From: Callorhinchus milii
Taxonomy: Eukaryota
Length of the DNA: 64,000 nucleotides
Direction: 5' to 3'
NCBI RefSeq assembly: GCF_018977255.1
Contig: NW_024704755.1
Location: 15,376,001 to 15,440,000, forward strand
Below, in pieces: positions 899 through 62,104 of this stretch; within the stretch, counting starts at the first letter, position 1; each line of letters starts with the position of its first letter. The notes below the pieces were generated by a model, which ran no database searches, was not told the DNA's origin, and saw only the letters and a program-made list of their open reading frames with translations. A program made the translations under genes and the position numbers.

Positions 899-3800
899 CT
901 ATCTTTTTAATTGGCATTCTTTGCCAATGATGATCAAAAGCAGCAGAAATACCAGGCCTCCCCCTGCACATCCAGCGATCAGCAAAATGGAAGGATAATC
1001 GTCACTCTCTACAAGAACAGCATAAACTGAATGTGTTATTGACCCCAGCAATGAGTTAAAGCTTTAGTAACTGCGCATTGTATCTGAATGGAGATGTTTT
1101 AGCAGGTTTTATTACTTAATTTTTTATTTTTAAACAAGGTCTTGGCAAGTCCACAAGAGAAACCAAATCGCCAGCTGGTCAACAAGACTTAGAATTGCAG
1201 GACAGTCACTGGGGTGAGAGGTCTAGCCAAACCTTCACCAAATACTATTCTGATTAGGCTGCAAAGGTGAGTCTCTACAGGGAGACGAAGCACATTCCAT
1301 TCCAAACACAGAAAAAATTAGAGGTGCACGACATTATTGAGCGGAGACCAGAAGTTTGAAATTTGATCAGTTTTTAAATATACTTCTTCTCAGGGAGATG
1401 GTATGAATCCTTTCAATTCAAAGACTACACACATTAAGCTGATTCTTATCTTATGCATATTTATATGGAGTATTCGGTAAGAAACCTATATGATCATAAT
1501 CTTCGGTTTCAATCAAATTAATATATTTTCCAACAAAAATTTAGTTAACAAAATTAACAGTTGGCCAATTTGAAGAGTCTTGTAGCTTAGTGGTTAGAGC
1601 AGTCACCACCCAAGCAGAGACCTTGGGTTTGATTACGGGGCCAGGCAAAAGGTTTGATAAGTGTCCTCACTCCACATGCTTCTCCACTGTTCACCTAAGT
1701 AGAAATCCGATTGTTAGTCGATAGGCAGATCTCTTTCCTGTGGGTAATAATACCTTAATAAACAATATTTTTTCAAAAATGATACAATGGTCACTCAACC
1801 CACGACCGTTTGTGGGACACTGCTCTGCGCAACTTGCTGCCGAGATTCACTCACAAAATATACAGTCAATTCATTTTCCAGTATATTTGTGACGCGCCTT
1901 CAGATATCTCGAAGATGTGATATGATGCTATATCAAATGCAAGGATTATTATTGTTAAATTACCTGTATTGGATTTAGAAACTGCATAGATGGCAACTGC
2001 TGGAATCCGGAGGCTGGTGTGAGATACCAGACAGGTATAAACAACCCCACTCTGTACAGTCTGTGCCTCTTCCAAATAGCTCGAAATTTCGTAAAGGCCC
2101 TTTGAATTCCTTTCTTTAGTGGAATTTATCCCAGTTTTAACTTCATTGTCATCTTTACTCCAGGTCAGCGTTATATCTTCTGGGAAAAACGCAGCCGTTT
2201 TACACACAAGTGTCAGAGACATTGTTGAATCTATTTCTGAATCTCTGGCGAACATCTTCAGTGGAGTGGGGGGGACTGTAGGACAGACAATAGAGCAGAT
2301 TCAAGTTACTAGTGATCAGTTGGAATACAAAACTTTATTCTCATTTGAATTGTATGTGAATTGTTTCTTTGCAGTATCATAACAATAGGTTCCTCTGAGA
2401 CGCTACACCACATGAAGGGTGCTACTGCAAGTTGTTTTTGCCATAACAAGGAATCTGGATTGTAACGGCAAGAAACGCATCCTGTTTGGGTGTTTAATTT
2501 GGAACAATGTTTAGGATATGAAACATTAAAAGATGTCTTGTAAGAGGTCCTGCCACAATTCACCAGATTAGGAGCTGGATTAAAGTATTAACTGTGATCA
2601 GAAGATGGGTAAACCTGATTTATATTTGATAGAACTGAGAAAGATGGGAGTTAATTTGATTGAGCTGTGAACAAATGACTGCATATTGGAGGTCCAGTAG
2701 AATAATAAATATAGGAGACAAATTCTAACATTGTGGCTAAACCTGTTAGACGTGACATGAACCTGGTCTGTTCACATTACAAAATCAACTCCCATAGGTG
2801 GTCTTAGATGCATATTGAAGTGGGATATTTAAAAGGGAGAAAGCTAAACATTTTAAGGGTTGGAAAGTGGTGGAGAAATTGGATTAAAAGTTATGCCAAC
2901 ATTCTCGAGCAACGACAACTGGCAATTTCACCTTCATCAGAGATAATAGCAAAACCTCCCCGTTAACACCAACATTCATTTTGTTCTGCTGTGTTTCTTC
3001 AAATTTAAGTTTCAAACCAACTCACGATAATTAGTATAGGTAATTCAAAATCAGTTCATGACTGTTGATGGAACATTGCTGTATGCAAATTGGTGCAAAT
3101 TGTCCAAGTGTTTTTAAACATCTGCCTTTCATATAAATCAGTAAATTGTAAAAGTCTGGACCGCAGGTGAAAGAGATTCTGATTATCATCATTATTAATA
3201 GAAGCAGTGTTATCAGCATTATTGTTAGTATTATTAATAGTAGTATTATTGTTGTGTTAATAATAATAGTAATCATAATATTAATAATAAGACTCGCGTT
3301 CGATATGGAGCTTTTTGTGTCGAGATGATGTCTCAAAGCTTTTCACAGGAATCACTGTAAAAAGTGACGATTTTGTAGGAGAACACAGCAGCCAATTTTG
3401 CACACACCAATGTGCCACAAATAGTCAGGAAGTGAATAACCAACTTTATCTGGTGGAGTCGTCTGCTGGGACATGAGGGGGAAAGAGTCTCTCTTCTGGT
3501 TTCGAAAAGAACCACGGGATCGTTAACATCCACCTGAACATGCAGGAGGGACCTCGGTTTAGCGCCTCATTCACATAAGGAGAACCTTAAGTAATAGAGC
3601 AATGTAAAGGTCTGGACCATAGTGCAAGAGATTCTGATTAATAATAATAATGATTCAACCTCAAGCCATAGAGCGCGTTCCTAACATTGCTTTTGATTGT
3701 GTGCGCTGTGATCTTCATGTTTTGATGTTGGACAATCTGAATAAATGCATTCAGCACAGAATAAAATACCAGATAGAGTTAATATGATACTTGCGTCAAT

Positions 3801-4654
3801 AGGAGGGTTATAACTGTTTGAAAGCGTTGCTTAAAACAATTATTGAGCAAATCAACTTCCCACTTTGCTGTGTGGTATAAACCCGCCATCTCCCATCAGT
3901 ACAATAACAAATGGGCAATACTTTAAATGAATTTCGTATTGATAAAAATATTTCAGGTTAAAATAAAATCTTTCGCTGTGTTATGTACGATCACATGGGA
4001 TTAAAAAATGAAACAAACAATTTGCCCAAAACAATTTCAAAATGCTGCAATGTTCGCCTTTCAACATTATTCACATTATCAACTGTATTCACACTTACCA
4101 TGTACAATTAAACGTGATCCAGTTCCATTTGCTGCTATTTTCCCCTGACGGCTCACTGCACAGATATAGACTCCTGAGTCGTGGAAACTCACATTTAGGA
4201 GCTGGAACGTTTTGAAGTTGAATATTTTCCTGTTGTCAGGACTTGTATGTAAATATTCGCGCTCTCCTTGCTTCCACCAGTAAAAGGTTAAATCTGAAGT
4301 GGTCTGAATATTGGCAAACTTGCAGCCGAAGGTAACGCTTTCACCTTCGAATGCTGTCTTGTCTACAGGATATTGGATCACTTTCATAGATGCATCCCCA
4401 GCAACTGTGAGAAAATAAATCAAACCTATAATTGGTGATTATAGAGTTGAAGAAACGTGACAAAATAACTATAGGGAAGGAGGGAGAGAAGGTGGAAGAA
4501 AGAGAATGAGCGAGAAAGATTTATGCATCCACTGAAACATTTTAAAACTCTTCATCAATATTGTTTTGTATTTAAGATCCGCTGTAGTAAAACAATTACC
4601 TGCGAAAATAATCCCCATTAGAGAGAGACAGGGGATCACATCACTCGCCACCAT
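899..4654 (-). CDS. N1: VJ-C1-TM Ig-superfamily receptor (SIRP-like), neutral TM, no cytoplasmic tail
   Basis: Exons, all GT-AG and phase 1: leader 4600-4654 (MVASDVIPCLSLMGIIFA); V 4099-4404 (306 nt; C..W..DSGVYIC..GTGSRLIV); C1 1964-2275 (312 nt; VCKTAAFFPEDITLTW..YTCLVSH); TM 899-1008 (ESDDYPSILLIAGCAGGGLVFLLLLIIIGKECQLKR*), with an in-frame TAG at the exon end. Confidence 0.85.
1580..1950 (+). mobile_element. Older tRNA-headed Deu-domain SINE in the C1-TM intron (orthologous copies ~37632-38010 and ~61400-61775)
   Basis: tRNA-like head (gtagcttagtggttagagc), central gactgtttgtggga..gctgtgc motif, and L2-like tail gctatatcaaatgcaaggattatt. Confidence 0.75.
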
Positions 4655-9880: not shown

Positions 9881-11579
9881 GTACCACAATGAACTTCATT
9901 CAACATTTTATTTATTGCAATTCAAAATTATGAAATCAAAGCTGTTATGTTCAATCACATCGCACCATACAGAGAACTTCGATAGAGATTTTAGGTGAGT
10001 GGTTTTACAGATATCACACAAAATTACAATAAAATCTTTATTCTTTGCCAAGCCATAACATCACCCTGACTAAAAAAAAAGCTCTATTTTAACACAACAA
10101 AATGTAATTTATGACACCTGGTGTTCAGGTCTGGGTAGTTCACACATACCAATGAGTACAATGTGAAAACACTTGAAACTTGGGGAATGAAAACTTGACT
10201 CAGTTTTCTGGTGGCAAATTTGAAAGTTTTGCCAATCTGGAAACAAATAACATAATAATCCAGGTTGTTTTTTAAATTAGGCTAAAACAGACAAATGTAT
10301 TATTTTTAAAAAGATAAAAAATGTGAAGCATTAGGCTGGTCCAGTGAAATAATGCAAAAGGAAGATAGATCAAAGAGTAGATGCCTTCTGGATCCTTTTA
10401 TGATGAAGGCTCTATGGCTACTGGTACATAGACTTATTAAAACCATCAACATCATTTTCAGATGCGGTCAGAAAAAAACAAAACTTGATCAACAATTGAT
10501 GTTCAACTGGACTCCAGGATATGTACCGACATTATTTAAAAAACACATTAAGTGTTGCATTTGGTGTATTATATTATATTAGTAATTGTCGGTTAATTGG
10601 AGCCAAATTGACCAAGCTGGTGTACAATATTTTGACCTGGGTTTACGAAGAAAATCTATGAAATTGCTGATATTCAATGGGTGAAAAGCAAATAAGAGGT
10701 GATATTCTAGATATATTCCAAGTCTTAAATGGTATAAATCAAATGCAATCAAATATATTTGATATAGTATACCAGACCGTTATGTAACATCTTCTGTTTC
10801 TTCCAGTCAGTGCATTTCCATCAGCACAATTCAATCACCTCTAAGCGTTTTCTTCCTTACTTCCTCTGTAATGTACATAAATGGATGTGATGGGACAAGA
10901 AATGACAAGATGTATACGCTGTGAAGATATGGCCATTACTGAGGGAAAAGGAAAAGGAGTTGGTAGGATTAGCAAGTTTGCAGGGCTATGGGGAGAGCGC
11001 GGGGAAATGCGATTGATTTGGAAGCTCTTTTCAAAGAGTCGGCACAGACACGATCGGCCGAATGGCCTCCTTCTGTGCTGTATAATTCTGCGATTCTGTG
11101 ATTCAGTAAGAAAACAAGAAGTGCAATTGTGAATATCACAAATCCTTTGATTCTGTGACTCACTGTAATCATTGTTGCGTTCCACGCAAACAAATTGACG
11201 TTTCAATCTGAAATGTTTACAACGAGACTGCAAACGTAACAGGTTTAGCTGATTTTTAAACGGCTGTTAAACACGATTTGCAGTGAGATTAATATATAAT
11301 ATGATAATCATGTAACAGATCTGGTTGCTATTGCACGAATGTATTGTTCAATATTTCCGGATACCTGAAAGTTTGGATTAGATATGTTTATATCCATTGA
11401 TTATAAGAGATTCCGCCAACAGAACAAAAAATAATTTCCGCATTGTAAAGTGTGTTGTCCCTGTAGCAGCGAACAACATGAACCTGTTTCCGTTTCATTG
11501 ATAACTGTATGTGCGACGATATAAACACAATATCTGTCAATGAAAAGTCAATGTTCTTTTAAAACAAAGAATGCTTTAC

Positions 11580-14500
11580 CTTTTATGTGGGTTGATTGTA
11601 AGATAGTCAATAAGAATGATGGTCAACAGTAACACTGCCACAAAGCATAACGTAAAACGGATAATCATCATAACGGACATTCCACCATTATCTGGAAAAC
11701 AAATTACGAAACTATAACATGTTTACATCAAAACTAAATAATCATTCTGTATTGGGAAAATGCACACGTTTTCCTTTTTTTACTGGAACGCTATAAAATG
11801 CGCATTCATTTTCAAATGAAAATAACAGCGAATAGTAGTGAAAATCAACGCGCGGCATTTTATTAGTGATGTTATAGAGACACAATTATATATTGTGTGG
11901 TAACAGTTCCCCATTGACTGTGCGCTCAGCTTCAAATGTACCGATAGAATGTGTGTTCTGACCCGAGCCATATAGAGCCACAGTCACCAAAACTCATTGC
12001 ATTGGAAATGTGCTCTCATCCCGAAAATCTATAAAACATCTCACAAGCGAGTTTTATTTTAATGCAGTGATTGTTGTTATAAAGGAATACGCAACAGAAG
12101 ATTTGCTCCAAATCGTCCTCAGAAAATGGAGTGGATTAATGAACCAATAGTATTTATGTTTCATTTGTGAACGTGTTTCAGTCCAAAAGTCCAATTTCTG
12201 ATGAACGCGCAGGACTATTGCACTTTAGAGAGGTTACTGAATGCCGAAAACGTAAATAACATTTTGAAGGGGAGCTATTCAGAATCTAATAACAAAACAA
12301 GAACATACGCAGATTTGAGATATTGTTCGATTCAAAGACTATACATTTAGAATTGGATTTTTAAAAAAAAATATATGGAGTTTCCAGCGAGAAACTTATA
12401 TGATTATAAATTGTTGCGTAACTAAATGTAAATACAATTTCCAGTAATTGGGTGTTTAACAACAAAAGCACCTTATTACTGGAAGACAATTTAGTCATCC
12501 TACCATAGAATCCTGGGTTTGGTTCAGAAACGGTGAACTTGGCAACTGCTGGAATCCGAAGGCTGATATGAGATACCAGACAGATATAAAGAGCCCCACT
12601 CTGTACAGGCTGTGTCTCTTCCATAGAGCTCCAAACTTTGTAGAGTCCCTTTGAGTTCCTTTCTTTTGTGGAGTTTATCCCAGTTTTAACTTCATTGCCA
12701 TCTTTACTCCAAATGAGCTTTATATCTTCTGGGTAAAACGCAGCCGTTTCACACACAAGTGTCGGAGGTGTTGATGAATCTGTTTCAGAATCTCTGGGGA
12801 ATATCTTCAGTGGGGTTGGGGGGACTGGAGGGCAGAAAATGGAGGAGAATCACATTACTGGTGATCAGTTGGAACATATAATTTGATTTCTATTTGAATT
12901 GTATGTAAATTGTTTCCTTGGAACATTATAACAAATAAGGCCCTCCGAGTCGCTACCCCACGTGAAGGGCCATATTGAAAGATGCTGTTGTCATAACAAG
13001 GGATCTGGATTGTAACTGAAGAAGCTGATCCTGTTCGGGTCTTCAATTTTGGAACAATGTTTAGGGTACGAAACGTTAAAAGGTGGAGGCGGTCCTGTCA
13101 CTATTCAGCAGATTAATAGTTGGATACAAGGATTTAACTATGACCAGAAGATGGCTAAACCTGATTTACATTTGATAGATCTGAGAAAGATGGGAGGTAA
13201 TTTGATTCAGGTATGAATGAATGATAGCATATTGCAGGCGCATCGTTCCAGTAAAGAAATAAAAATAGGAGACACGATCCTAACATTTTGGCTAAACCTG
13301 TTAGACGTGACATGAAACCGTCCAGTCCGCATGCAATACTATGATATTATGGAATCCCCTCCCAAGTGGCCTGGATGCAGATTGAAGTGGGATATTTAAA
13401 AAGAAAAAAGCTAAACATTTTAAGGGGCTGGAAAGTGGTGGCGAAATTGGGTTAAATGTTACGCCAGCATTCTCGAACAACAACTGAGATTTCACCTTCA
13501 TTAAAGATAATACCAAAACATCCCCATTAATAACAACATTCATTTTGTTCTGCTGTGTTTCTTCAAATTTAAATTTCAAACCAACTTACCATAATTAGAA
13601 TAGGTAATTCAAAATCATTTCATGACGACTGATGGGACATTGTTGTATGGAAATTGGTGCAAATGGTCCGAGTGTTTTTAAATATCTGCCTTTCATATAA
13701 ATCAGTAAATTGCAAATGTCTGGACCATAGGTGCAAGAGATTCTGATTCTGATTATCATCATTATTAGTAGTAGCAGTGTTATTAGCATTATTGTTAATA
13801 TTATTATTAGTAATATTATTGTTGTGTTAGCAATGATGGTATGGTAATAATAATTGTAATATTAATAAGACTTGCATTCGCCTTTTGTGTCGAGATGATG
13901 CCTCAAAGCATTTGATAGGATTCAATGTAAGAAAGGAGCGATTTTGTAGGAGAACACAGCAGCCAATTTTGCACACACCAATGTGCCACAAATAGTCATG
14001 AAGTGAAAAACCAACTCTATCTGGTGGAGTCGTCTGCCGGACAGGGGGGAAAGAGTCTCTCTTCTGGTTTCGAAAAGAACCACGAGATCGTTAACATCAC
14101 CTGAACATGCAGGAGGGACCTCGGCTTAGCGCCTCGTTCACATAGGGAGAACCTCAAGCAATAGAGCAATGTAAAGGTCTGGACTATAGTACAAGAGATT
14201 CTGATTAATAAAAATGATGATTCAACCTCAAGCCATAGAGCGCGTTCCTAACATTGCTTTTGATTGTGTGCGCTGTGATCTTCATGTTTTGACGTGGGAC
14301 AATCTGATAAATGCTTTCAGCACAGAATAAAATACCGAATAGCGTTACTATTATGCTTGCGTCGGTAGGAGGGATATAATTGTTTCAAAGCATTGCTTAA
14401 AACAATTATTAATCAACTCAAATCCCCACTTTGCTGTGTGGTATAAACCCGCCATCTACCATCAGTACAATAACAAATGGGCAATACTTTAGATGAATTT

Positions 14501-27109: not shown

Positions 27110-27459
27110 GTCTGTCTCTGGCGGACATTTATACGAGTGACAGAGAACTCTACTTTTCAACGTCTACTATTGATTTCCAGATCTTCTGTCACAAGTGACC
27201 GTGGATTATTTGGTACAGAGTAGGTCGCTGTGACACTGACTTTGTTTCTTTGGGTTCGTGAAATGTTGCAGGTGTGCAGAATGCAATTCGAAATCACACT
27301 TTTACATCAAAATTGTAAAAATAGTAACCCATCCTGTGAAGATCAGAAAACAAGCTGAGCGTATCTAAACTTAAAACACACACCGTTCAGCGTCATTAAT
27401 AGTTTATGGTGCTTTCTACAACTGGAAATGTTGATTTGAGCACTAACTCGTGGAATAAG

Positions 27460-49505: not shown

Positions 49506-50395
49506 CGTGATCAGTTGCTGAGACTCACCATCAACATGTTATTGGGTGTAACAAACATTTGCTGATTGTCTAATATGAAATAATTCGCAGTGTCATATGA
49601 CTTCCTGTCTCCATGGTCAGAGATGAGTGACATACGATTTGCAAAGAGAATTGTGCTTTTGAATTGTAACTGGAATCACTCCTCAGATCGGCAATCAAGA
49701 TGAAGGCAAATATATTCATATTTTTGTCTCTTTTTGTTTTCTGTATTCTTTGAATAATTCTCCATTTTCAGTCCCCATATTAACATTGATAATTGGTATA
49801 TAATAAACAATTATATGTCTTTATAGTGGATATACAAACCTAATGAAACTACATTTTCTCCAGTTTAGCATCAGTTTTAGGCTACACCATGGAACGGCAA
49901 TCCAAGGGAAAGCACACAGAGAACCAAAATGATCTTTGAATCAAACACAAATGTTTGGTTTATCTAATGTTCTGAGCAAAGGTACAATGGTTTCTCTTGA
50001 ACCTAAGCCTTTAATCAATCAATATATTACCATATTGAATGTAGTTCCATATTTTATTGAATGCAATTCAATATAATGAATACAAAGCATATCTGGATGA
50101 TTTTTTAGTAACAATTTAACAATAGATATTACAGAAATGCAAAATAAATGCTTCCATTTTTACAAAATCAATTTATCTTCTTTACAAACTCTACAATCAT
50201 ACAGAATCTCTTTCCTTTACAGGATAATAATCCTTTACACGTGATTTATTTGCACCTATTTGCACGCAGTCGTGTCCCATAAGTAGACATGAAGTGAATG
50301 ACCAATTTTCTCTGAGAATTGTTGGTCATGATACTCAGAGGACCCATTTCAACTGAGGAATGATACTAAGAGATCTTTAACCTACCCCTGAACAG

Positions 50396-51814
50396 TCAGT
50401 CTGGACGTTGGTTCAACGGCTCATCTAAAGGATAAGAAGAACACTCTGCAAACATATTGCGCCTTTCACGCGGAACAGCTTCTCCGGACATCTGGAACTA
50501 CAGCTATGACAATGCAGAACACAGCATTACAGCATTGGAGCATCAGCTTAGAATATGGACTCAAAGTCTCAACCTTGGGCTTAAACCCAAAGTGCACATG
50601 TTACCAGGCATCACCTCGTTTGATTGCACAGCTTCCTCAGTCTCAGCTGTGGATAATGCCCGTGGATGGTGTTCAGTGGCGGTCAGCAGAAGTGAAACAT
50701 ATGTATATTTTGGAGGGTTAGACTTTCAGTCCGAGAGGGTCGGCACAAAACTTTCATCAGACTATGTTTTATGAATTGTGCACAAACTTGATGTTAGGAG
50801 TGGGAATGGTCATCGTAATAGATCCCTGGGTTGAAACGTCAAGAAACGCCACTTACTTGGCATTTACAGCCGATCAACTGTGAGCGCATGAAAAACCGAG
50901 AGTGTTCAATTGCCCCTTTGCCTTTTGTATGGATTTTGAATTACTGCTATGAATAATATGGATAAATGATGTAACAATTATTGTTTTAGAATTGATAAAA
51001 TGTATTATTTGCTAATGTGGTGAGTTGTATTATTTTGGTCTTAAGTTATGCAGTGATCGAAATTAAAATTGTATTTCCACTTAATATGCTTTTAATAATA
51101 TTCTTGCATTTGGTATAGTGCCTTATCATGTCTTCGAGACGTCTGATTCGCTTTTAAAATGAATAAAATGCGAAAGTTATTAATGGACAAACAATATTAA
51201 TAACTATATAGCATTCACCGCATTTATTACTTTTTGTGTGATTTCTAAATGCCAATTTCGCTCTTCATTCACACTCACTGCACACAATTAATCGTGATCC
51301 AGATCCTCTTCTAATTATTGATCCCTGATGGACCACTGCACAGCGATAGACTCCAGAGTCCTGTAAACTCACATTCAAGAACTGGAAGAAGCCGCTTCCT
51401 TTAGTTTTTACACCAAATAGTTTCCTGCGATCCTCCTTTGTATCCAAATAGCCGCTCTCACCCTTCTTATCCCACTGCACCTTCACTCCTGAACTGCCTT
51501 GAGGGAAGGGAAAGTTACAGTGGAAGGTAACGTGTGTCCCTCTGATGGCAGCCACAGGGTCGGGGATTTGAGTCACTTTCACCGAAGCATCGCCATCAAC
51601 TGTCAGAAAATAAAGTCAAACACTGACTTCTTAGATGATAAGCAATGGAGAAAACAAATGAGTAAAAGAGGAGAAAACGTAAGTGTATAAGATAAATGTC
51701 ACATGGAAACAAGTTTGCACATATTTCATAGAAGAACTGAACTATATAATGAACATATATACCTGTTGAAATAATATGTAAGGCCGACAGGTACAGGAAG
51801 ACAACACTCACCAT
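50396..51814 (-). CDS. X5: C1-less leader-V(J) gene, possibly secreted single-V protein
   Basis: Leader 51763-51814 (MVSVVFLYLSALHIIST). V 51279-51599 has an intact acceptor and donor and the motifs C..W..DSGVYRC..GSGSRLIV. Candidate in-frame stalk exon 50605-50646 and terminal exon 50396-50424 (DEPLNQRPD*). Leader and V are well supported; the downstream exons are inferred. Confidence 0.65.
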
Positions 51815-54800
51815 GTCTGCCTCTGGCTCTGATGGTCTGTCACAAGTGACCGTGGATTATTTGGTACAGAGTAGGTCGCTGTGACACTGACTTTCTGTTT
51901 CTTTGGTTTCGTGAAATGTTGCAGGTGTGCAGAATGCAATTCAAAATCACACTTTTACATCAAATTTGTAAAAATAGTAACCCATCCTGTGAAGATCAGA
52001 AAACAAGCTGAGCGTATCTAAACTTAAAAAACACACCGTTCAGCGTCATTAATAGTTGGTGCATTAATAGTTCGTCATTAATTAATATGGTGCTTTCTCC
52101 AACTGGAAATGTTGATTTGAGCACTAACTCGTGGAACAAGTGGTGTCAGAAACATTCCAATTTGATGGGTAATCTCTTCTCATGCTTTTATCCAACTGTC
52201 CCCTGTTTATAGAAATTAACCTTTCCCTCTCTTCTGGCATAGTGCGTCCCTATTATCACTCCATGCAAATGTTTACCCCCATCCCTCTAAACTGTCCAAT
52301 TGTCGGTCCATCTCCAACTTACCCTTTGTATCCAAAATCCTGGCCACTCAACTGTGCTCCCCATTTTGTCCACTTGGTGCTAGAAGTTCAATTTCTACCC
52401 ACAGCAGAGACAGCATAGTCAAAGCAAGGATGATATACTCTATGTTTCTCTCCCTCTCTCTCTCTCTCTGCAACCTTGACTCTCTGCTTCTTGCGCTCCA
52501 AGATCATTCTGCTGCTTTCAAAATTGTCGACCATTCCATCCTACTTGACCATCTCTCTTCCCTCATCCATCTGCTTTGGACTGCACGGCCATCTGCAGAA
52601 TATTTCAGGTCTGTATCATCGACCCCCTTCTTCTTCTCATCTACATGGTCTCTCTCTCTCTCTCGATATTATCCTCAGACAAGCGATTAGCTTTCACATT
52701 TATACGAGTGACAGATAACTCTACTTTTCAACTTCTACTATTGATTTCCAGATCTTCTGATGCTCTCACCGTTTGCGTGTCAAGACATGGATGAGCCCAG
52801 ACTTCTTCGAACTTCTAATGGATGATGGAAGCCATCCTTCTTGTCTACTGTTAACAACTCCTTTCTCCCAGGGATTGCTGCACCCTCTCCGCACCACCAT
52901 GAGTGGCCGAACCTTCAATTTTATGCCCACAAAATATACACAGTTGCATCATTTCACATTGTATCCCGTGAAGCTCTTTTGAATTGTCTCAACAACATGA
53001 AAACGTGCAACATCAATCAAGGTTAAGACTGTAATTATTACTAGATTCATATGCCCTAACCTCTGCCAATCCCTCCACACCCACTTTGTCTCATTCTTTC
53101 TCAATCTCTCTTTGGTTCTGACTCAATCCTACCACTTGAAACATGTCTTATCAGCCCCCCTCTCTCCCCCTCACCTGTCCTTGCTCTGTATCTAACCTAA
53201 ACCCTTTGAAGCCCTCCAAAACAATATCCGATGTGAAGGATGCTATAAAGGGATGATGTTTAATCAACTGATAGCAAATGTGTTTCTTGCATCTTTTGTA
53301 ATTGCTCAGATGATTGTGAAGGAGTTTGAAGAAACATTAATCTGTAGCTCCATCTGACATATTACAATTGCTCATAAATTATGGCATCGGATGGCGCTGC
53401 AGACTACACCATATTTATACTATGAAAAGCTGTAACCTACACATTTGTTTCCCTTGTTCACCAGTTGCACCTTTGTCTGACTGGCTCAGGATTTCTGTGT
53501 GTACCCTGACCCCTGTGCTGCACCATGGGAAGCTTCCAGCCACTATTTCCTGAATCTCTGGAACTCCCTGCCTCTATCCCTGTACCACACAGTATTTTTA
53601 AGTGTCTTCAAATCTCACTTGAAGATTTTGCGCTTCGATTGTGTCTATGGTCAATTTACCTTTCTCCCTGGCTCAGAGTCAAGTTCTGCTACTGTTCAGT
53701 CCTGGGTATGCTATATAAATTCAAGTTGTTGTTGTTGCTTCGATGGTTCCATCAGAGCAGATGTATCGAATGCCCGATAACTCTTTTTGCTCTGCTGCTC
53801 TTCTGACACATGCAGAAATCTTTTACCGCGCTTATGAGTATCCAAACAAACTGACATTTTTATGCCACCGACACAAGGAAAGTTTCCTTTGGCTGGAATG
53901 GAATGCACACTTTCCAGAGGCATAGACTGGGAGGAATTACTCAAGGACAAACCAGTTATAGAAGATTATGCTGCACTAGCAGGACAAATATAGAAAGTAA
54001 AGCAGTGGCAAAATAGACAAAAACACCAAAATGGATCAAGAGGAAATAGCAAGTGAGATAAAGGAGAAGCAGAAGATTTATAAAGCTTGTAAATAGAAGG
54101 AGATGGTGACCATTGGGCTGAATACAAGACTGTACAGAAAGAGACGTATAGGATCCAAGAGCCAACTGGAAAAGAAAATCTAAACTCAAAAACATAAACC
54201 CTCACATCCTTTGAATATTGCAACAGGGAAGATGTCAAAATTTTAAGGGAATCAGATAGGGTTATATAAAAAAAGAATGGACTCCCGGTAGCAAAAATGA
54301 AATGAATAATTACTGGAGCTTTTTTTTATCAGTAAAGACATTAAAATCATGACCACGAACATACTACATTTTCAGCTTGACTAAGTTGGCAACACTCTCA
54401 CTGCTGAGTCAGAATTTAAGCGTTCAAGCCCCAAGTCTGGACACGGAAATCATATAGACAAAATGACACTCCAATGTCATACTGGGGTGGTGGGGAGAGG
54501 GGCGGGAATGCAGCATTTTTGGAGATGCTGTCCTTCGGATGAGAAATTAAACCAAGGGCCCAACTGCCTGTTCATCAAAGATCCCATGTCATTATACAAA
54601 GCAGAAGGGAGTTTCTCCAGATTTCCTGGGCAACAGTCCCCCAAATTGGTCACATACTTTATGGCTGTTTGTGGCGTATTGCCGTGCACTAAAAAACACA
54701 GCCACTGAACTTTAGAGGATACTCTATGAAGTGCTTTGAGACATCCTCCAAAATTTATAATGAGTGTGTATCCACATAGATTATGCTGTCAGCACCTGAG

Positions 54801-57800
54801 GCCAGAAGGCACTGACTGAAAAGGAAAGCCTCTGTCTTGTCAACGTTCAACTGGAGGAACGACATCCAGCACTCATCAGGACTTGATGTCCAAATAGGCA
54901 ATCAATCAGAACAGCAGTAGTCCTGGAAACAAGTTCAGAAGCTGACATAAATTGGGATGCTATTCAGCTACATGTGGAAGTTAACTTCATGTCTGCAATA
55001 ACATCACTGAGCAGGAGCATGTTATTATTAAAAAGGAAAAGGATAGATCTCTAAATGACTTGGATTTATAGATCCAAATAAAATTCACACGTGATATCAA
55101 TTTGGGACAACTGGGGAATCAGAGGAGGCAGGAAATGTTGGCCAAAATAACTTGACAGAGTATTTACATGGGCTGCTAAATTAAGTATAGATAAATGAAT
55201 GGTAAATTCAATATAGATAAATTAATGGTAAACTAAGTATAGATAAACTTATGCGATAGACCAATAGGAAACACGAGCATTTCATGGACTGGATAGAAAT
55301 TGCCAAGGGGAAAGCTGAAATAAATCCTGGTGTGTTAGCTGACTCTTCACTCATATGTCAAAACAGTGTGAGGCAGCAATAAACAAGACAAACAGGATGC
55401 TGTGCTCTTTGCTGCACTAAATCAGTTGAGTTCAAACCCAAAATATCACACTTATCTTTGGCGAGACCACACCTTCATTATTGGAGAGCGATGTGCCTTC
55501 CCTTGACCCAACACAGCTATCCAGCTATCGGCCCATCTGCAACCTTCCTTTTCTGTCCAAGGTCTTTGAGAAAGCCGTTGCTCCCAATTTTGCACTTTCG
55601 TCTCCTCCATGAGCTCCTCCAATTGGGTTTCTATGCTGTGCACAGCACGGAAACTGCTATGGTCAAGGTCACAAACGACATCCTGACCATGTGTCCAAGG
55701 CTCCCGATGCCTCGTCGTCCTCCTTGACCTCTCCGCCACTTTTGACACTGTGGATCACTCAATACTCCTCCACTGCCTCTCCTCCCATGTCAACCTTCAA
55801 AGTTCTGTCCTTGACTTGTTCAGGTCCTACCTTTCACAACGACTCCACTTCGTCTCAGCGAACAGCTTCACCTCCAGCCCCGAACCATCTCGTATGGCAT
55901 TTCTCAGCGCTCTGTCCTCCATCCCCTCCTCTTCACCCTCTACATGCTCCCACTTGATGGCATCATCCACAGACATGGCGTAAACTTCCCGAAATATGCG
56001 GATGACCCCACATGCATTGCCATACTCTGCCACTGCCTCACCCCCATAGGCTGCTGAAATCCATACCCATGCATTCGTTACCTCAAGGCTCGATTATGGA
56101 AATTCCCTCCTCATCGGCCTTCCCAACTCTTCCCTTCACAAAATGCAGATCATCAAAAACTCTGCAGCTCATGTACTCTCACGCATCAGGCTCCGTGACC
56201 CCATCACTCCCACCCTCGCCCGACTCCACTGGTTCACCATCTATCAGAGGATTGAATTCAAGATCTTCGTCCTCACTTCCAAGGCCATCCATGACCTTAC
56301 CCCTCTTTCCTTTCTGACCTAGTGACTCCCTACCAAACTGCCCATTCGTTCCATTCAGCAGGCTCCGGCCTGCTCCATGTCTTCCGCCTGACCCGCCCTA
56401 CCATCGGTGGCCGGGATTTCAGCCTCTCTGCACCTACACTCTGGAATTCCTTCCCACAGTCTCTTTGCCTCACTTCCTCCCTTGCCTCCATGAAGGCTGG
56501 TCTCCAGATCCTCCTTTTCAATCATGCCTTCGGTCGCTCTCCCACCTCTCTGCCTTCCCCCACCGCTACCCTCCCCCTCTATAAATGTAATTTTGTTGTT
56601 GTTGTTGTCACTGTGACATAATGGGGCTGTTGAGTTCCAACAGACAGCATGGAAGAAAGCAACGAGGATGGCCCCCAGGATTAGAGGAATGAACTTTGAG
56701 AGGTATTTAAAATATTAAATGGGATTGAAAAAGTATACGCAGATCTATAAGTTTAGAGTTACAAAGGCAATATCACAATAGATCCCAGGTTTTACCATGG
56801 TGGTGGGGGGAACTTGTAGTGCGTTCTGAAAGGATGTGATCAGATAGGCCAAAGGGTCTTCTTCAATGAAACCAATTGTGAGTGAAGAGGTAGGGAAGCC
56901 CAAGGGTGCACTGGTTGTACTATTGGAGTTTAACAAGCTAAAGTCTCAAAGCTTGCTATTGAAAGCACTATCTGACGAGCTTCACTGCTTGTCCAGCGAG
57001 GACTACTCTTTTCATTAGGTTTTTGGCCTACAGAGTTAACAGTATCTGAGTGGGAAGATACCCCACTCCCAGTGAGAGGTCTACTCCTTGAAGTACCTTT
57101 CTTTTCGACCGTGCCTTTGGTCAGCTTCCTCCCCCTCCCCCGGCTCGGTCCTGGGATCCGTTACTGTGAAGCGCTCTGTGATGCCGTCCGGCGTGGAGGG
57201 CGCTGTATAAATCCATGTGAATCCAAGTTGTTGAAAGTGATTCCAAAGTTCTTTTGCTAAGCAAGTCACACTGGACGTAGCTCAGCTACAAGGCCACGCT
57301 GTTTGCTTACTGGCTCCAATGACTGTGGCTGGTTGAAATTAGACATCCAAAAAGCACTGGGTTTAGTCTACACTAAATAGATAGCAAATATCAGGAATTC
57401 CTTGGAAACCCATAATGAGCAGCACAAATAAGCATGAAATGTGTGAGAGGATAGATCCCCCATCCCCCTGACCCTATTGGCACACATCCGTGTGGATTGA
57501 GCGGAGGTTGTACGAGTTGGTGCGTTGCCATTTTACTGAAGCAACACTTTAAACATGTATTTTTAAAAAAGATTTTTTGTTAAATTAGTAAAAAACACAC
57601 AGTATCACATAAAGCCACATCACGTTACACTATATCCTGTAAAGCGCTTTGAGATATTGTGGCGACGGAATAAGTCACTACATTAAATTCATGGATAATT
57701 AATAAAAACAAATTTGAATTAAACCCACTCTACAGTTCAGGCTTTACTTGTAGTGAGCCAGGACATGATGCCCACAACGATATACCTCATGTTGTAAGAA

Positions 57801-58549
57801 TGCATATCTGTTGTTACACAAACAAAGAAATATTGTGCACAGTTGTTACAGCCACTTTACTACAATAGCCACAGCCTAATGGATGGAAACAGTTTGTAAC
57901 CCCTTGCTCTATATATAATCTGAGAGAGCGAGACTTTTGTAATGGAATTATTCTGTGACATTTAGAAATACAGCAGAACGATTGGGGTTTTAATACTTAT
58001 TTGTTTCATGTGAGATATATTTTTAGCATTTAGGTGAACAGCTCAACCGTTCAACACCCACGCCTCAACTTTTTCACTGGGTTGGATGAATTGTGTCATA
58101 TTTTGTTGACAGCTTTTATGTTAGACCTTACCAAGTGTTGTTTCATTAGTACTGAAGAGACAGAGTGACCAGAAGAGACTGATTTATGCAACTTGTTTTT
58201 TATTGAGAGGTTGATTGAACATGTTACACAACAGTTCCATTCGTTTGAACTCTGGTTTTAGTTTTGCAGCAGTTAAAGAGCTATATTCTAAACAAATAGT
58301 TCAGTAGATACCTTTATGGTTTGGTCAAATTCACATTAAAATAATGTTTAGCATTTAAGTATAGCTATATAGATATAATAAGTAACTTTCCAAGACATTT
58401 CCTAAAGACATCTAATGTAATAAACTAATAAATGAACTCATGGTTCAAACAGGTTAAAAGAGAATAGCAGCACAGGAATAATATGCACATTGTTCACTTT
58501 GGTGGAAAACAACACCTAATATACAACAATATCAGTTTAGGAGCCTGTT

Positions 58550-61500
58550 TCATAACTTGGATCTTGGTTCCCTGCAGATAGCTGCTGCTGCTCCTCCGTG
58601 GTTTCTCACATGTAGCTCTGCATACTCTGTATTCTTAACTCTACTTTTAGGTTTTCCTGTTTTATTGGAAGGATGTAAATCCAGAGCGGCATATGTCAGC
58701 TTGTGCTCCGCTGCTCCTTGCTTGGTCTGTAAAGGCAATTTTTGAGAATTTGATTATATTAATTCATTTTATTCTTCAGTAATCTCCTCAAATAGGCAGT
58801 CACTTCTCCTATAAAGAACTGAGTCAAACAGAATCCAGCAGCTACAATTTCTACCACGAATAGGTTAGTAAAGAAAAGTGAAAATCAATCAGTTTATGAG
58901 TTGTTCATTGACCTACAGAAATGTGGGTATATATTTCTGTATATAATTGATGACCCAGTGCCTTATAGATTGATGCACAATAGCTGGTCTTTTTCAAGAA
59001 AAATAAATGTCTATACAGTGACAAATTGTCGTGAGCATATCACAGCCCAGGACAGTGTCAGAGAGTGAACATTAGAGGAGAAAGAAAGATTAACCACAGA
59101 AATGTTGCAAACAGTCTTATAGTGAACACTGAAGTGAGTTCCACTCTATTTACCAAAGCAAGGAAATCCAGTTGAATACAAAAGGTTTATGTTTCGTATT
59201 TGTGTTTCAAAGATATACCTGGGCGTACACAGTGCTCTCCTGTTGTTTGGGTCTTGGAGTTTTCTTGGAACTGGTCAAATTCAAGGTGACATAAGCCACC
59301 GGCTCATTCTCTCCTCTGTGCATCGTCTATAAAACAGATTGTGATCACAACAACAGCAACACATTGGATTTTAGAGCACCTTTCACTTCGGAAGGACATT
59401 CCAGGGCGCTGCTGGAATGTTGTCCTCACTGTTCTGAAGATTGCTGTGTAAGTACTTATCTGAATGTCCATAAGTTTAAAATATTTAAGACATAGCTTTC
59501 ATATATTTTAAAAGCAGACAATTTTATTGAATACTCTGTCACCAAATGTATGTCACCGGGCACCTCATATTTGAATGATACATTGAGGCTGCAGAGATGC
59601 TCTGAGGGAATACATTTAAAATGTTCTAATTTATTTCTGAAGAACGGTATCTTTCCATCACAACAACCCTGTTTTCAGATGAAACATCTGCTGAGTTGAA
59701 TTTAATAAATGTACCTGCTCTTCGCAATGACTCGATCCCTTCTGGTTTCTGCGTGGACCTTAGAAGGAAATTAACAGAAGAAGAGTTCACTCAATTTCCA
59801 CAACAGTAATTTTGAATATATTTTGGTTAGACTGAATGAAAAACGATTCAAAACCCACAAGCTGCCAGAATCGTTTTTATTTTTAAAAAAGTATAAAGTT
59901 GTCTTGCATCTAACTCTAATTTAAGCCCAGGAGTAGAATCAAATAAATCACACCACCTTAACTACAAACTATCTTGCCCTCTCAATCTTATTCCTGTAAA
60001 CAGCGCTATACCAAATGCAAGGATTATTATTAATATTATTATTATTATTGTTCTCTGTAGCTCCATCATAGAGTCCCTCTTTCCCAAGCCACCTTCAAAA
60101 TTTTCAACAAATTAACCAAGAGAATAGATAATTTGGGTATGAGATGTAAAACCGAAGAGGTAATATTAAACTGATATAAATTGTCAGTGTCAGAACTAGA
60201 ATACTGTATGCAGGATTGTTTACCTCACTTAGGAAATTTACCAGACTGATTCCGGGGAAGATTGGTGCTGCGAGTTCAGTGGCCCAGGCAGAATGTGCAT
60301 TTTATATAATAAAACATTTTCTCGTTGTATTTTATAAAATTAATCAATTGTAACACGATATGGAAAAGATGGGTTAATGGGATGTGGACTCTTTAAAGAA
60401 GGAATAAAGACACCATAGGCTGAATGACCTTCTGCACTGTACATTTCTGTAATTGTATCACAACAGATTTCAGACATTTGTTGCATGGAAATTTCTGATT
60501 AAATATGCAGCTAAATATAAGCAGAGAGAGATTCTGTTAGGGCATTTGTCAATCAATCGCAATATATTAATGATTGGCGTCACTTTACAGGATGTTTTTC
60601 TCTCCTTGTTATCTGGAATTCTCTGCTATTAACTGAACTTTTGTGTTAAATTAAACATTTACATTTAACCTGAATTAAACAGGAATATATCTTACCTTTC
60701 TTTTTGCTTAATTGCCATTGCTTTCCAATGATGAACAAAAGCAGCAGAAATGCCAGGCCTCCCCCTGCACATCCAGCGATCAGCGCATAAGGAAGCTGAG
60801 CGTCACTCTCTACAAGGACAGTATAAACTGAATGTGTTATTGAACACAGCAATGAATTATAGTTTCAGTAAATGCGCGGTGAATCCGAATAGAGATATGT
60901 TAGCAGGTTTTATTATTTGATATTTTATTTTTAAACAGGGTCTTAGTAGATCCGTAGGAATCCAAGGCACTTTTAATGAGAAACTAGATAGCCGAGCTCG
61001 TCAACAAGACTTAAAATTGCAGGACAGTCACTGGGGTGAGGGGTCTCGCCAAATCTATGACAAATACTATTCCGATTAAGCTAGAATGGTGAACCTCTCC
61101 ATGGACATGAAGCACATTCCATTCCAGACACCAAAACAATTAGAGGTGAACGACATTATTGAGCAGAGACCAGGAGTTTGAAATGTGATGAGTTTTTAAA
61201 TCCTTCTTCTCAGGCAGATGGTATGAATCTTTTCAATTCAAAGACGATACACATTAAGCTGATTGTTATTTTGTATATATTTATATGGAGTATTCGGCTA
61301 CAAAACTATATGATCATAATCTTCAGTGCAAACCAAATTAAATATTTTCCAAAAACAATTCAGTTAATAACAATTAACAGTAGGATATTGGCCAATTAGT
61401 GGAGTCCTGTAGCTTAGTGGTTAGAGCAATCACCGCACAAGCTAGAGACCCTGGCTTCCATTACTGGGTCAGGCAAAACATTGGGCAAATTTCTTTACAC

Positions 61501-62104
61501 CACACGTCTCTGTATTCATCTAGCAGTAAGTAGGAATCCAGTTGTTAGTCAATTGGCAGATTGCTTTCCTGTGGATAATGATAATACCTTAAAATACAAT
61601 AATTTGAAGTACTTCGGTCACTCAATCCACGACTGTTTGTGGTACACTGCTGTGCACAAACTGCTGCCAAGATTCACCCACAAAACATACATTCAATTCA
61701 CTTTCCAGTTTATTTGTGAACCGCTTCAGGCTTCTCAAAGACGTGATACAGCGCTATATCAAATGCAAGGATTATGTTTATTGTGAAATTACCTGTGTTG
61801 GATTTAGAAACTGAATATCTGGCAACTGCTGGAATCCGGAGGCTGATGTGAGATACCAGACAGGTATAATCAACGCCACTCTGTACAGGCTGTGTCTCTT
61901 CCAAATAGCTCGAAAATTCATAAAGTCCCTTTGAATTCCTTTCTTTAGTAGAATTTATCCCAGTTTTAACTTCATTGTCATCTTTACTCCAGGTCAGCGT
62001 TATATCATCTGGGTAAAATGCAGCCGTTTTACACACAAGCGTCAGAAATATTTTCGAATCTATTTCAGAATCTCTAGCGAACATCTTCAGCGGGGTAGGG
62101 GGGA
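58550..62104 (-). CDS. I6: inhibitory VJ-C1-TM receptor, 5'-truncated by the window edge (leader and V expected just beyond 64000)
   Basis: C1 61793-62104; TM 60696-60809; cyt1 59715-59758; cyt2 59219-59326 (VAYVTL, TVYAQ); cyt3 58550-58726 (LTYAAL, TEYAEL). 62.2-64 kb is homologous to the V-C1 intron of N1 (2.3-3.75 kb). Confidence 0.85.

What the first reader, a model, noticed from the sequence alone, without database searches (positions are those of the whole stretch)
899..62104. Tandem cluster of non-rearranging VJ-C1 paired immune receptors (inhibitory, activating and tailless) in a probable cartilaginous fish
Seen in the sequence: six leader-V-C1-TM genes with clean splice phase and three distinct signalling ends (four-Tyr tail, Arg-TM, immediate stop). 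The ORF track misses the cytoplasmic exons, the Arg-TM exons and most leaders. Established: mammalian SIRPs form this same triad (SIRP-alpha ITIM/ITSM, SIRP-beta charged TM, SIRP-gamma tailless) and have J-like V plus C1 domains. VJ-C1 non-rearranging genes such as chicken PRARP and the Xenopus VJC1 genes are discussed as relatives of the antigen-receptor ancestor. Inference: this is a one-V/one-C1 paired-receptor family, either an early SIRP relative or a lineage-specific convergent system. I cannot tell whether it has been described.
Basis: partly seen in the sequence, partly recalled or inferred. Interest (0 to 1): 0.9.

Follow-up and report, generated by a model that had tools for sequence, protein, structure and literature searches.

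The report
Elephant shark paired V-C1 immune receptors
This stretch of elephant shark (Callorhinchus milii) DNA holds a tandem cluster of antibody-like surface receptor genes, each with one variable and one constant domain, in "brake", "accelerator" and tailless versions; databases annotate them only by automatic names and I found no paper describing the family.

Summary
On the minus strand lie five complete leader/V/C1/TM genes and a sixth cut by the window edge; its leader and V lie beyond base 64000. Every internal exon border is AG..GT.

Three signalling ends exist:
- g4 and g6 have a neutral TM and a four-tyrosine tail.
- g2, g3 and g5 have an Arg-containing TM followed at once by a stop.
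- g1 has a neutral TM ending in a stop.

The V and J-like parts share one exon and no RSS adjoins them. The window is Callorhinchus milii. NCBI and Ensembl models reproduce the tail junctions and the Arg-TM exon.

The family occurs across Chondrichthyes; all 20 top profile hits that I sampled were chondrichthyan. Activating and inhibitory members share 90-100% identical V domains, and the Arg-x16-Asp TM module is conserved from chimaera to sharks.

SIRP membership is not shown:
- there is one C1, not two;
- the V-C1 profile scores Ig light chains (72-74 bits) above SIRP-alpha d1-d2 (49.5 bits);
- the tail, however, aligns collinearly with the SIRP-alpha tail.

The tailless form is one frameshifted copy, not a class. 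Two orphan leader+V pairs went unmentioned. Function, ligand and adaptor are inferred.

The parts
899..4654 (-). g1: leader 4654-4600, VJ exon 4404-4099, C1 exon 2275-1964, neutral TM exon 1008-899 ending in TAG. Tailless, 259 aa. A-type V.
   Evidence: AG/GT at all borders. The stop lies directly before the former GTAAGA donor.
11576..15219 (-). g2: leader 15219-15165, VJ 14970-14665, C1 12824-12504, Arg-TM exon 11691-11576 with stop. Activating type. A-type V.
   Evidence: The V domain is 90% identical (aa) to that of inhibitory g4.
21958..24685 (-). g3: leader 24685-24631, VJ 24436-24131, C1 23181-22861, Arg-TM exon 22073-21958 with stop. Activating type. B-type V.
   Evidence: The Ensembl/UniProt model P0009 is the same protein apart from one residue and includes the Arg-TM exon.
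26574..27109 (-). V_X1: orphan leader 27109-27058 plus V exon 26894-26574. The acceptor is TG instead of AG, and the YxC motif reads CxC. No C1 or TM exon lies before the next gene. Probable pseudogene.
33350..40097 (-). g4: leader 40097-40043, VJ 39847-39542, C1 38337-38026, neutral TM 37039-36926, cytoplasmic exons 34589-34546, 34156-34049 and 33523-33350. Inhibitory type, 370 aa, four Tyr.
   Evidence: The C1-skipped splice form is 100% identical to the NCBI model P0006.
45884..49505 (-). g5: leader 49505-49451, VJ 49256-48951, C1 47107-46787, Arg-TM exon 45999-45884 with stop. Activating type. B-type V, duplicate of g3.
51279..51814 (-). V_X2: orphan leader 51814-51763 plus V exon 51599-51279. 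Acceptor, donor and ORF are intact, but no C1 or TM exon of its own follows.
58550..62104 (-). g6 (partial): C1 62104-61793, neutral TM 60809-60696, cytoplasmic exons 59758-59715, 59326-59219 and 58726-58550. Inhibitory type. Its leader and V lie beyond base 64000.
   Evidence: The translation equals the C-terminal part of the NCBI model P0001.
20939..38709 (.). First copy of a 24-25 kb tandem segmental duplication (g3, V_X1, g4). The second copy is 44856-62471 (g5, V_X2, g6).
   Evidence: 92.5-98% nucleotide identity, offsets 23.8-25.2 kb.
44856..62471 (.). Second copy of the segmental duplication.

Best explanation
The window is part of a cluster of at least 450 kb in the elephant shark. The cluster encodes germline-joined VJ-C1 type I membrane receptors that form a paired activating/inhibitory family.

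Shown:
- Each gene has a split leader, one V exon ending in a J-like strand, one C1-set exon and a TM exon.
- Inhibitory genes (g4, g6) add three small exons. These encode a disordered tail with four conserved tyrosines, three of them in ITIM/ITSM context.
- Activating genes (g2, g3, g5) use a different TM exon. It carries an Arg in the outer third and an Asp at the inner end, and it stops after 9 cytoplasmic residues.
- The family grows by tandem segmental duplication.
- V/C1 ectodomains are exchanged or homogenised between the two signalling types.

Inferred:
- On ligand binding, the tyrosines are phosphorylated and recruit SHP-type phosphatases, which damps the cell.
- The Arg-TM forms pair through the membrane with an Asp-bearing ITAM adaptor. 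Given the outer position of the Arg, an FcR-gamma/CD3-zeta type is more likely than DAP12. This triggers the cell.
- The near-identical ectodomains let both types see the same or closely related ligands, as in SIRP, KIR, LILR and PIR.
- g1 is an inhibitory-type gene that lost its tail through a frameshift. It is either a decoy/adhesion form or a null allele.
For: Architecture, splice sites and ORFs.

Independent gene models:
- NCBI P0006 is 100% identical to g4 without its C1 exon.
- NCBI P0001 matches the g6 tail.
- Ensembl P0009 matches g3 including the Arg-TM exon.

Structure: the AlphaFold model has two confident Ig domains (pLDDT about 90), a TM helix and a disordered tail. The best Foldseek matches are Fab light chains, i.e. 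V-C1 chains.

Pairing:
- V identity is 88-92% among g1, g2 and g4, which carry three different signalling ends.
- The g3 V domain is identical to the V of the ITIM-bearing P0004.
- Arg and ITIM forms are mixed in three well-supported subclades (98/87, 100/99 and 100/99).

Ancient activating module: R-x16-[IVL]D[HY] occurs in Callorhinchus, Heptranchias, Scyliorhinus and Chiloscyllium proteins (species).

Tail: it is conserved across the family (ERTVYAQTKQ, LTYAxL).

Duplication.

Cluster extent: 15.247-15.695 Mb on scaffold MU249845.1.

Adaptor rule: Arg-TM receptors pairing with FCER1G is established knowledge; see for example PMC8102735 (listed).
Against: There is no expression, protein, ligand or signalling data.

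The database models are predictions, and I could not see their RNA support.

The second tyrosine (TVYAQT) is not a canonical ITIM or ITSM.

I could not check whether C. milii has FcR-gamma or DAP12.

dN/dS in V is 0.37-0.56, so I detected no positive selection of the kind often seen in pathogen-driven paired receptors. This was only a whole-exon pairwise estimate.

The conserved inner Asp of the activating TM has no counterpart in the textbook adaptor model.
Confidence: 0.75

Rival explanations
1. These are true members of the SIRP family: an early one-C1 form of SIRP-alpha/beta, orthologous or co-orthologous to tetrapod SIRPs.
For: - The order V, C1, TM, four-Tyr tail matches SIRP-alpha.
- The tail aligns collinearly with the human SIRP-alpha tail over all four tyrosines: 37% identity over 76 aa, pairwise E 6e-7.
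- The family tail profile scores 39 bits on that tail, against at most 7.2 bits for 200 shuffles.
- SIRP-alpha d1-d2 matches the family profile collinearly at 49.5 bits, and d3 at 42 bits. The ectodomain sequence was verified against PDB 2wng and 7st5.
- NCBI's automatic names are mostly 'SIRP-beta-1-like' or 'PTPNS1-like'.
Against: - There is one C1 exon, not two.
- The V-C1 profile scores Ig lambda (73.9 bits), Ig kappa (71.6) and UrIg2 (57.5) above SIRP-alpha d1-d2 (49.5).
- The V domain alone does not retrieve SIRP d1 from the PDB.
- The activating residue is an outer Arg plus an inner Asp, not the Lys of SIRP-beta.
- In the tree, SIRP-alpha sits on a very long branch with no affinity to the family.
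- Synteny was not tested.
Confidence: 0.35
2. This is a lineage-specific chondrichthyan family, assembled from an Ig-light-chain-like or UrIg-like VJ-C1 unit and generic ITIM and Arg-TM modules. It converges on the SIRP layout. On this reading it is a membrane-bound relic of the non-rearranging antigen-receptor lineage.
For: - All 20 single-stretch hits sampled from the top 150 of an exhaustive HMMER search are chondrichthyan.
- The word-indexed profile search drops from 224 bits (the lowest family member) to 86 bits (IgM).
- V-C1 scores highest against Ig light chains and UrIg2.
- The best fold matches are Fab light chains.
- The leader is split and the VJ lies in one exon, as in antigen-receptor genes.
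Against: - The J-like strand lacks the Phe/Trp of FGxG; it reads N-G-[TS]-G.
- No extracellular interchain Cys is present and there is no evidence of dimerisation.
- Light chains dominate the PDB, which inflates their rank.
- The tail similarity to SIRP-alpha is hard to ascribe to chance alone.
- Linkage to Ig/TCR or the MHC was not tested.
Confidence: 0.35
3. Much of the array is decaying duplicates, and only one or two genes are functional. The apparent 'triad' is then an artefact of recent duplication and frameshift.
For: - g3/g5 and g4/g6 are copies within a 92.5-98% identical duplication.
- g1's tailless state is a single frameshift found in 1 of 8 sampled neutral-TM exons.
- V_X1 has a broken acceptor, and V fragments with stops lie at 42964-42866 and 19010-18888.
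Against: - All six V-C1 genes keep open frames, canonical Cys/Trp/YxC/YxCxVxH residues and AG/GT borders.
- dN/dS stays below 1 in most pairs.
- Both signalling types are conserved across lineages that diverged about 420 Myr ago (the date is from PMC3964593).
Confidence: 0.1

Closest known systems
SIRP family (SIRP-alpha, -beta, -gamma; human chromosome 20p13)
   Same: - J-like V followed by C1-set Ig, a single TM, and clustered genes.
- An inhibitory member whose four cytoplasmic tyrosines align one-to-one with those of SIRP-alpha.
- An activating member with a basic TM residue and a very short tail.
- A member with almost no tail.
   Different: - One C1 instead of two.
- The ectodomain is not specifically SIRP-like: 49.5 bits against 72-74 bits for Ig light chains.
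- An outer Arg plus an inner Asp instead of a Lys.
- The tailless form is a singleton frameshift.
- The ligand is unknown.
Other paired Ig-like receptor families (KIR, LILR/PIR, CD300, chicken CHIR, teleost NITR and LITR)
   Same: - Tandem, fast-duplicating clusters.
- Near-identical ectodomains on ITIM tails or on charged-TM/short-tail modules.
- Exon exchange between the two types.
   Different: Those families use C2-, I- or V-type domains, and NITRs use V or V-I. None has an antigen-receptor-like VJ plus a true C1-set domain. Here the activating TM module is ancient and shared by chimaera and sharks, not recently derived.
UrIg and UrIg2 (elasmobranch non-rearranging antibody-like genes; PMC12227049)
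   Same: Split leader, VJ in a single exon followed by C1-set domains, and non-rearranging. The UrIg2 V-C1 unit matches the family profile at 57.5 bits.
   Different: - UrIg has three C domains and is secreted.
- UrIg2 has 9-11 C domains.
- Both are disulfide-linked homodimers reported only in elasmobranchs.
- The present genes have one C1, ITIM or Arg-TM signalling ends, form a multigene cluster, and occur in a holocephalan too.
Ig light chains and TCR chains
   Same: A V-J-C1 two-domain ectodomain. These give the best profile and fold matches.
   Different: - No RSS and no split V/J.
- No interchain cysteine.
- The J-like strand lacks Phe/Trp.
- The chains carry their own signalling modules.

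Membership tests
SIRP family | N-terminal V-set domain with a J-like G strand, germline-joined | tested here: met
   V-set match. GxG(T/S)xLxV lies at the end of the V exon.
SIRP family | Two membrane-proximal C1-set domains (V-C1-C1) | tested here: not met
   There is exactly one C1 exon between V and TM in every gene.
SIRP family | Ectodomain sequence closer to SIRPs than to other VJ-C1 proteins | tested here: not met
   Family profile scores: Ig lambda 73.9, Ig kappa 71.6, UrIg2 57.5, SIRP-alpha d1-d2 49.5 bits. The V domain alone does not retrieve SIRP d1.
SIRP family | Inhibitory member with the SIRP-alpha type four-tyrosine tail | tested here: inconclusive
   The alignment is collinear: 37% identity over 76 aa, E 6e-7. 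The tail profile scores 39 bits against at most 7.2 for shuffles.
SIRP family | Activating member with a TM Lys that pairs with DAP12 | tested here: not met
   The TM carries an Arg in the outer third and an Asp at the inner end. Adaptor pairing cannot be tested here.
SIRP family | Conserved synteny with the SIRP locus; CD47 binding | not testable with these tools
   Only 10 kb flanks could be fetched, and all seven loci lie inside the cluster.
Paired activating/inhibitory Ig-like receptors (generic kind) | Clustered genes with near-identical ectodomains but opposite signalling modules | tested here: met
   g2 versus g4 V domains are 90% identical. The g3 V domain is identical to that of P0004 (ITIM type). 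Clades are mixed.
Paired activating/inhibitory Ig-like receptors (generic kind) | ITIM-bearing tail in one type; charged TM residue and short tail in the other | tested here: met
   VAYVTL, LTYAAL and TEYAEL in one type; Arg-TM followed by a stop in the other.
Paired activating/inhibitory Ig-like receptors (generic kind) | Opposite signalling demonstrated in cells | not testable with these tools
   Needs experiments.
Rearranging antigen receptors (Ig/TCR) | Separate V and J segments flanked by RSS | tested here: not met
   V and J are in one exon. RSS-like matches are at chance level and not next to V exons.
UrIg/UrIg2 | VJ followed by three or more C1 domains; disulfide-linked homodimer | tested here: not met
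   One C1 and no extracellular unpaired Cys. Definition taken from PMC12227049.
Tapasin/TAPBPR (one of NCBI's automatic names) | Large N-terminal tapasin domain before the Ig domains | tested here: not met
   Proteins of 259-370 aa match only Ig-type Pfam families.
B7 family / B7-H6 (one of NCBI's automatic names) | IgV without a J-like strand, plus a CD80-like C2-set constant domain | tested here: not met
   C1-set scores 54.4 bits against a cut-off of 21. C2-set_2 scores 17.3 bits, below its cut-off of 21. A J-like strand is present.
PRARP / Xenopus VJC1 genes | Sequence and synteny relationship to those VJ-C1 genes | not testable with these tools
   Neither the papers (Fu 2019; Ohta 2019) nor the sequences were available.

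The most novel reading that the evidence does not exclude
This family may be the surviving membrane-bound form of the ancestral VJ-C1 receptor. It combines an Ig-light-chain/UrIg-like ectodomain with a SIRP-alpha-like four-tyrosine tail and an Arg/Asp TM module at least 420 Myr old. That would link SIRPs directly to the non-rearranging antigen-receptor lineage. It would also show that activating/inhibitory pairing on a VJ-C1 scaffold was already present in the chondrichthyan ancestor.
Probability: 0.15. Interest if true: 0.85.

Novelty: new member of a known kind. Interest (0 to 1): 0.55.

Why it matters
Cartilaginous fish are the oldest living lineage with Ig, TCR and MHC. Their germline-encoded innate Ig-type receptors are barely described: a 2019 review of their immunity does not mention ITIM receptors at all.

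Here is a large receptor family found across chondrichthyans, with a clear inhibitory/activating split on an antigen-receptor-like VJ-C1 scaffold. That offers three things:
- A candidate NK or myeloid regulatory receptor system for sharks and chimaeras.
- A new data point for the debate on non-rearranging VJ-C1 genes and the origin of antigen receptors. That debate currently rests on UrIg/UrIg2, NKp30, PRARP and SIRP.
- A case where the activating TM module is ancient rather than recently derived, which bears on how paired receptors evolve.

The sequences already sit in public annotation under misleading automatic names: SIRP-like, tapasin-related-like, lambda-light-chain-like, NCR3LG1-like, MHC class II-like, TCR-beta-like and PD-L1-like. 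The practical gain is recognising them as one family.

Tried and rejected
- **Placing the window on the scaffold.** Seven loci of MU249845.1 were fetched and none overlaps the window at 98.5% identity or more. The window probably lies in the 15.375-15.4725 Mb gap, but that is inference.
- **Looking up the spliced g5 protein and P0006 by exact sequence.** Neither is on record.
- **Synteny.** No non-Ig neighbour lies within the 10 kb flanks of any locus, so synteny with the SIRP locus or MHC paralogues was not obtained.
- **Bony-vertebrate relatives.**
  - The word-indexed searches return only chondrichthyan family members and then IgM.
  - The tail-only search had just 15 candidates.
These are family members or giant multi-Ig proteins, so the best non-chondrichthyan relative could not be seen.
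- **Literature.** Nine full-text searches found no paper on this family. The key J Immunol and Immunogenetics papers are not held.
- **UrIg/UrIg2 identity.** Rejected on architecture.
- **V_X exons as a first V of g3 or g5 (a V-V-C1 gene).** Considered. The V_X exons have their own leaders and V_X1 lacks an acceptor, so they are treated as orphan units. Splicing of V_X2 into g5 is not excluded.
- **One gene giving both forms by alternative TM exons.** Rejected for the window. No ITIM exons lie downstream of the Arg-TM exons, and no Arg-TM exon lies between C1 and a neutral TM.
- **Positive selection.** Pairwise dN/dS shows none at whole-exon level.


Full report
**What is in the window.**

The window is eukaryotic DNA of 37-44% GC with no N runs. 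ORFs on the minus strand match Pfam V-set and C1-set (C1-set up to 54 bits against a cut-off of 21). tblastn with these ORFs finds seven V exons and six C1 exons, all on the minus strand.

Reading the junctions base by base gives five complete four-exon genes (g1-g5). Each has:
- a leader exon of 55 nt (MVAS..GIIF[AT]);
- a V exon of 306 nt;
- a C1 exon of 312 or 321 nt;
- a TM exon.

A sixth gene (g6) has only its C1, TM and cytoplasmic exons in the window; its leader and V lie beyond base 64000. All internal borders are AG..GT. The Ig exons are in phase 1, and each spliced frame is open to its stop.

**The signalling ends.**

*Inhibitory type (g4, g6).* The TM is neutral and glycine-rich (LIAGCAGGGLAFLLLL). 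Three small exons follow:
- 44 nt encoding GPRRNQKGSSHCEEQ;
- 108 nt carrying VAYVTL and TVYAQ|T;
- 174 or 177 nt carrying LTYAAL and TEYAEL.

*Activating type (g2, g3, g5).* These use a different TM exon, DNGGM.VMMIIRF.LCFVAVLLLTII..DYLTINPHKR*, which ends in a stop.

*Tailless (g1).* It has the neutral TM but reads ..GKECQLKR*, with TAG directly before the former GTAAGA donor.

After splicing, the second tyrosine motif is TVYAQT, which is not a canonical ITIM or ITSM. The other three motifs are canonical.

**Not rearranging.**

V and the J-like strand (N-G-[TS]-G-[ST]-x-L-x-V) lie in a single exon. Heptamer/nonamer searches with 12 or 23 bp spacers give chance-level matches, and none lies next to a V exon.

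**Source and independent gene models.**

The best protein hits are Callorhinchus milii models on the 18.1 Mb scaffold MU249845.1.
- NCBI P0006 ('NCR3-like isoform X2') equals g4 with the C1 exon skipped, residue for residue. This confirms the leader-V, TM-exon 5, exon 5-6 and exon 6-7 junctions.
- NCBI P0001 matches the g6 C1, TM and tail.
- Ensembl/UniProt P0009 is g3 with one residue changed and includes the Arg-TM exon.
- My spliced g5 model is not on record as an NCBI product. Several older models are chimeras of neighbouring genes (P0002, P0005, P0010).

These are predictions, and I could not inspect their RNA evidence.

**Family and distribution.**

Relatives occur in Heptranchias, Heterodontus, Scyliorhinus, Mustelus, Chiloscyllium, Hemiscyllium, Pristiophorus, Mobula, Hypanus, Hemitrygon and Amblyraja. 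Their automatic names vary widely: SIRP-beta-1-like, PTPNS1-like, tapasin-related-like, lambda light chain-like, NCR3LG1-like, MHC class II-like, TCR-beta-like and PD-L1-like.

The invariant positions are the Ig hallmarks: Cys/Trp/DxGxYxC in V, and Cys/Trp/YxCxVxH in C1, followed by VPPTPLKI at the V-C1 joint.

In the word-indexed profile search, the lowest family member scores 224 bits and the next hit (IgM) scores 86. In the exhaustive HMMER search, all 20 single-stretch hits that I sampled from the top 150 are chondrichthyan.

Seven fetched loci place the cluster at 15.247-15.695 Mb or wider on the scaffold, with a reversed and a forward sub-cluster. None overlaps the window.

**Evidence for pairing.**

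There are two V types in the window: A (g1, g2, g4; 88-92% amino-acid identity) and B (g3, g5; 99%). A and B are 66% identical.

Type A therefore appears with all three signalling ends. Type B appears with the Arg-TM in the window, and with a neutral TM plus ITIM tail in P0004 just outside it, where the V domain is identical to that of g3.

In locus L001, which carries P0004, similarity to g5 runs through C1 and stops about 100 bp before the position of the Arg-TM exon. A neutral TM and ITIM exons follow, so this is a hybrid gene.

An ectodomain tree shows Arg-TM and ITIM forms intermingled in three supported subclades (98/87, 100/99, 100/99). The Arg-TM module itself, R-x16-[IVL]D[HY], is shared by Callorhinchus, Heptranchias, Scyliorhinus and Chiloscyllium.

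So the two signalling modules predate the holocephalan-elasmobranch split (about 420 Myr ago; PMC3964593), while the ectodomains are exchanged or homogenised within lineages.

Half the window is a 24-25 kb tandem duplication at 92.5-98% identity. Whole-exon dN/dS is 0.37-0.56 in V.

**What it resembles.**

AlphaFold gives two confident Ig domains, a TM helix and a disordered tail. The best Foldseek PDB matches are Fab light chains.

The family profile was scored against verified comparator sequences:

| Comparator | Bits |
|---|---|
| Ig lambda V-C | 73.9 |
| Ig kappa V-C | 71.6 |
| UrIg2 V-C1 | 57.5 |
| SIRP-alpha d1-d2 | 49.5 |
| SIRP-alpha d3 | 42.0 |

The V domain alone finds no SIRP d1 in the PDB. 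The C1 domain finds Ig CH, UrIg2 and SIRP d3 at similar levels.

The tail, by contrast, aligns collinearly with the human SIRP-alpha tail over all four tyrosines: 37% identity over 76 aa, E 6e-7. The tail profile scores 39 bits on it, against at most 7.2 for 200 shuffles.

Taken as a whole protein, SIRP-alpha is the nearest named mammalian protein. Membership is nevertheless not established: there is one C1 rather than two, the ectodomain has no specific SIRP affinity, the TM carries Arg plus Asp rather than Lys, and synteny is untested.

UrIg/UrIg2 are excluded on architecture. Tapasin and B7-H6 are excluded on domain content.

**The tailless gene.**

Of eight neutral-TM exons in the window and the sampled loci, only g1 carries the stop. 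The other seven read ..K[KR]KG|gt. g1 is therefore a frameshifted inhibitory-type gene, and a conserved SIRP-gamma-like class is not shown.

**Mechanism.**

Shown: architecture, motifs, pairing of ectodomains, conservation and mode of expansion.

Inferred from established knowledge of ITIM receptors and of charged-TM receptors (for example Arg-TM KIRs pairing with FCER1G, PMC8102735):
- the tail recruits SHP-type phosphatases;
- the Arg-TM forms assemble with an Asp-bearing ITAM adaptor;
- both types see the same or related ligands.

None of this could be tested here.

**Literature.**

Nine full-text searches found no description of this family.
- Recent papers from the laboratory most active on shark VJ-C1 genes discuss UrIg, UrIg2, NKp30 and PRARP, and state that VJ-C1-type genes were identified in tetrapods (PMC12227049, PMC10751288).
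- The elephant shark genome paper does not mention the family in its main text.
- A 2019 review of cartilaginous fish immunity contains no ITIM receptor.
- Several subscription papers were not available, so a prior description cannot be ruled out.

**Verdict.**

The finding is a real, apparently undescribed member of a known kind: paired Ig-like receptors on a SIRP-like VJ-C1 scaffold. The sequences are already in public annotation under automatic names.

Noticed in passing
window 26574-27109 and 51279-51814 (minus strand): There are two orphan leader+V units of a third V type (V_X), about 50% identical to the A and B types. They resemble the V of paralogue P0010, which has its own distinct C1. 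No C1 or TM exon follows either unit before the next gene's leader. V_X1 has lost its acceptor (TG) and its YxC tyrosine. V_X2 is intact, so splicing into g5 exons is not excluded.
   Followed up: partly
window 42866-42964 and 18888-19010 (minus strand): Short relics of V_X-like V exons. The relic at 18888-19010 contains a stop codon. They mark older, decayed duplication units.
   Followed up: no
L001 (MU249845.1:15346696-15374538), gene at 10001-17843: P0004 is a hybrid gene. Its B-type V is identical to the g3 V, and its C1 differs from the g3 C1 at only a few positions. It is joined to a neutral TM and an ITIM tail. Similarity to g5 ends about 100 bp before the position of the Arg-TM exon. 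This looks like an unequal-crossover or gene-conversion breakpoint between activating and inhibitory genes.
   Followed up: partly
window 39542 to 37039 (g4): The NCBI isoform P0006 skips the C1 exon, which is phase-compatible. That gives a V-only ITIM receptor, which NCBI's pipeline named 'NCR3-like'. I could not check whether the isoform is real.
   Followed up: no
window 35834-36172 (+), also 36325-36609, 30972-31568, 56012-56621, 38775-39234, 17043-17912, 5950-6234: Retroelement debris lies in introns and between genes. One ORF matches Pfam RVT_1 (34 bits) inside the g4 TM-to-tail intron, antisense to the gene. Several other ORFs share a ..LAPSY[LI]SDLL.PY.P.R.LRS.. type motif and have no Pfam hit.
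   Followed up: partly
window 7872-8637, 19673-20180, 43334-44404: Low-complexity serine/leucine-rich ORFs (SLSLSHSL..) occur on both strands at several intergenic sites. They probably reflect a simple CT-rich repeat.
   Followed up: no
P0034, P0035, P0139, P0198 (Heptranchias, Pristiophorus, Hemitrygon, Hypanus): A third subfamily has the same V-C1 ectodomain. Its TM is followed by CCKFCKCK and a lysine-rich tail with no tyrosine motifs. It forms its own clade (96/99) in the ectodomain tree.
   Followed up: partly
Activating TM exons 11576-11691, 21958-22073, 45884-45999: Besides the outer Arg, an Asp at the cytoplasmic end of the TM is conserved at fixed spacing (R-x16-[IVL]D[HY]) from chimaera to sharks. 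The usual one-charge adaptor model does not explain it.
   Followed up: partly
L004 (MU249845.1:15586300-15609434), about 13836: NCBI model P0013 ('immunoglobulin lambda-1 light chain-like', 229 aa) ends by read-through after C1. A normal neutral TM exon lies downstream, so automatic annotation of this family often misses the TM and tail exons.
   Followed up: partly
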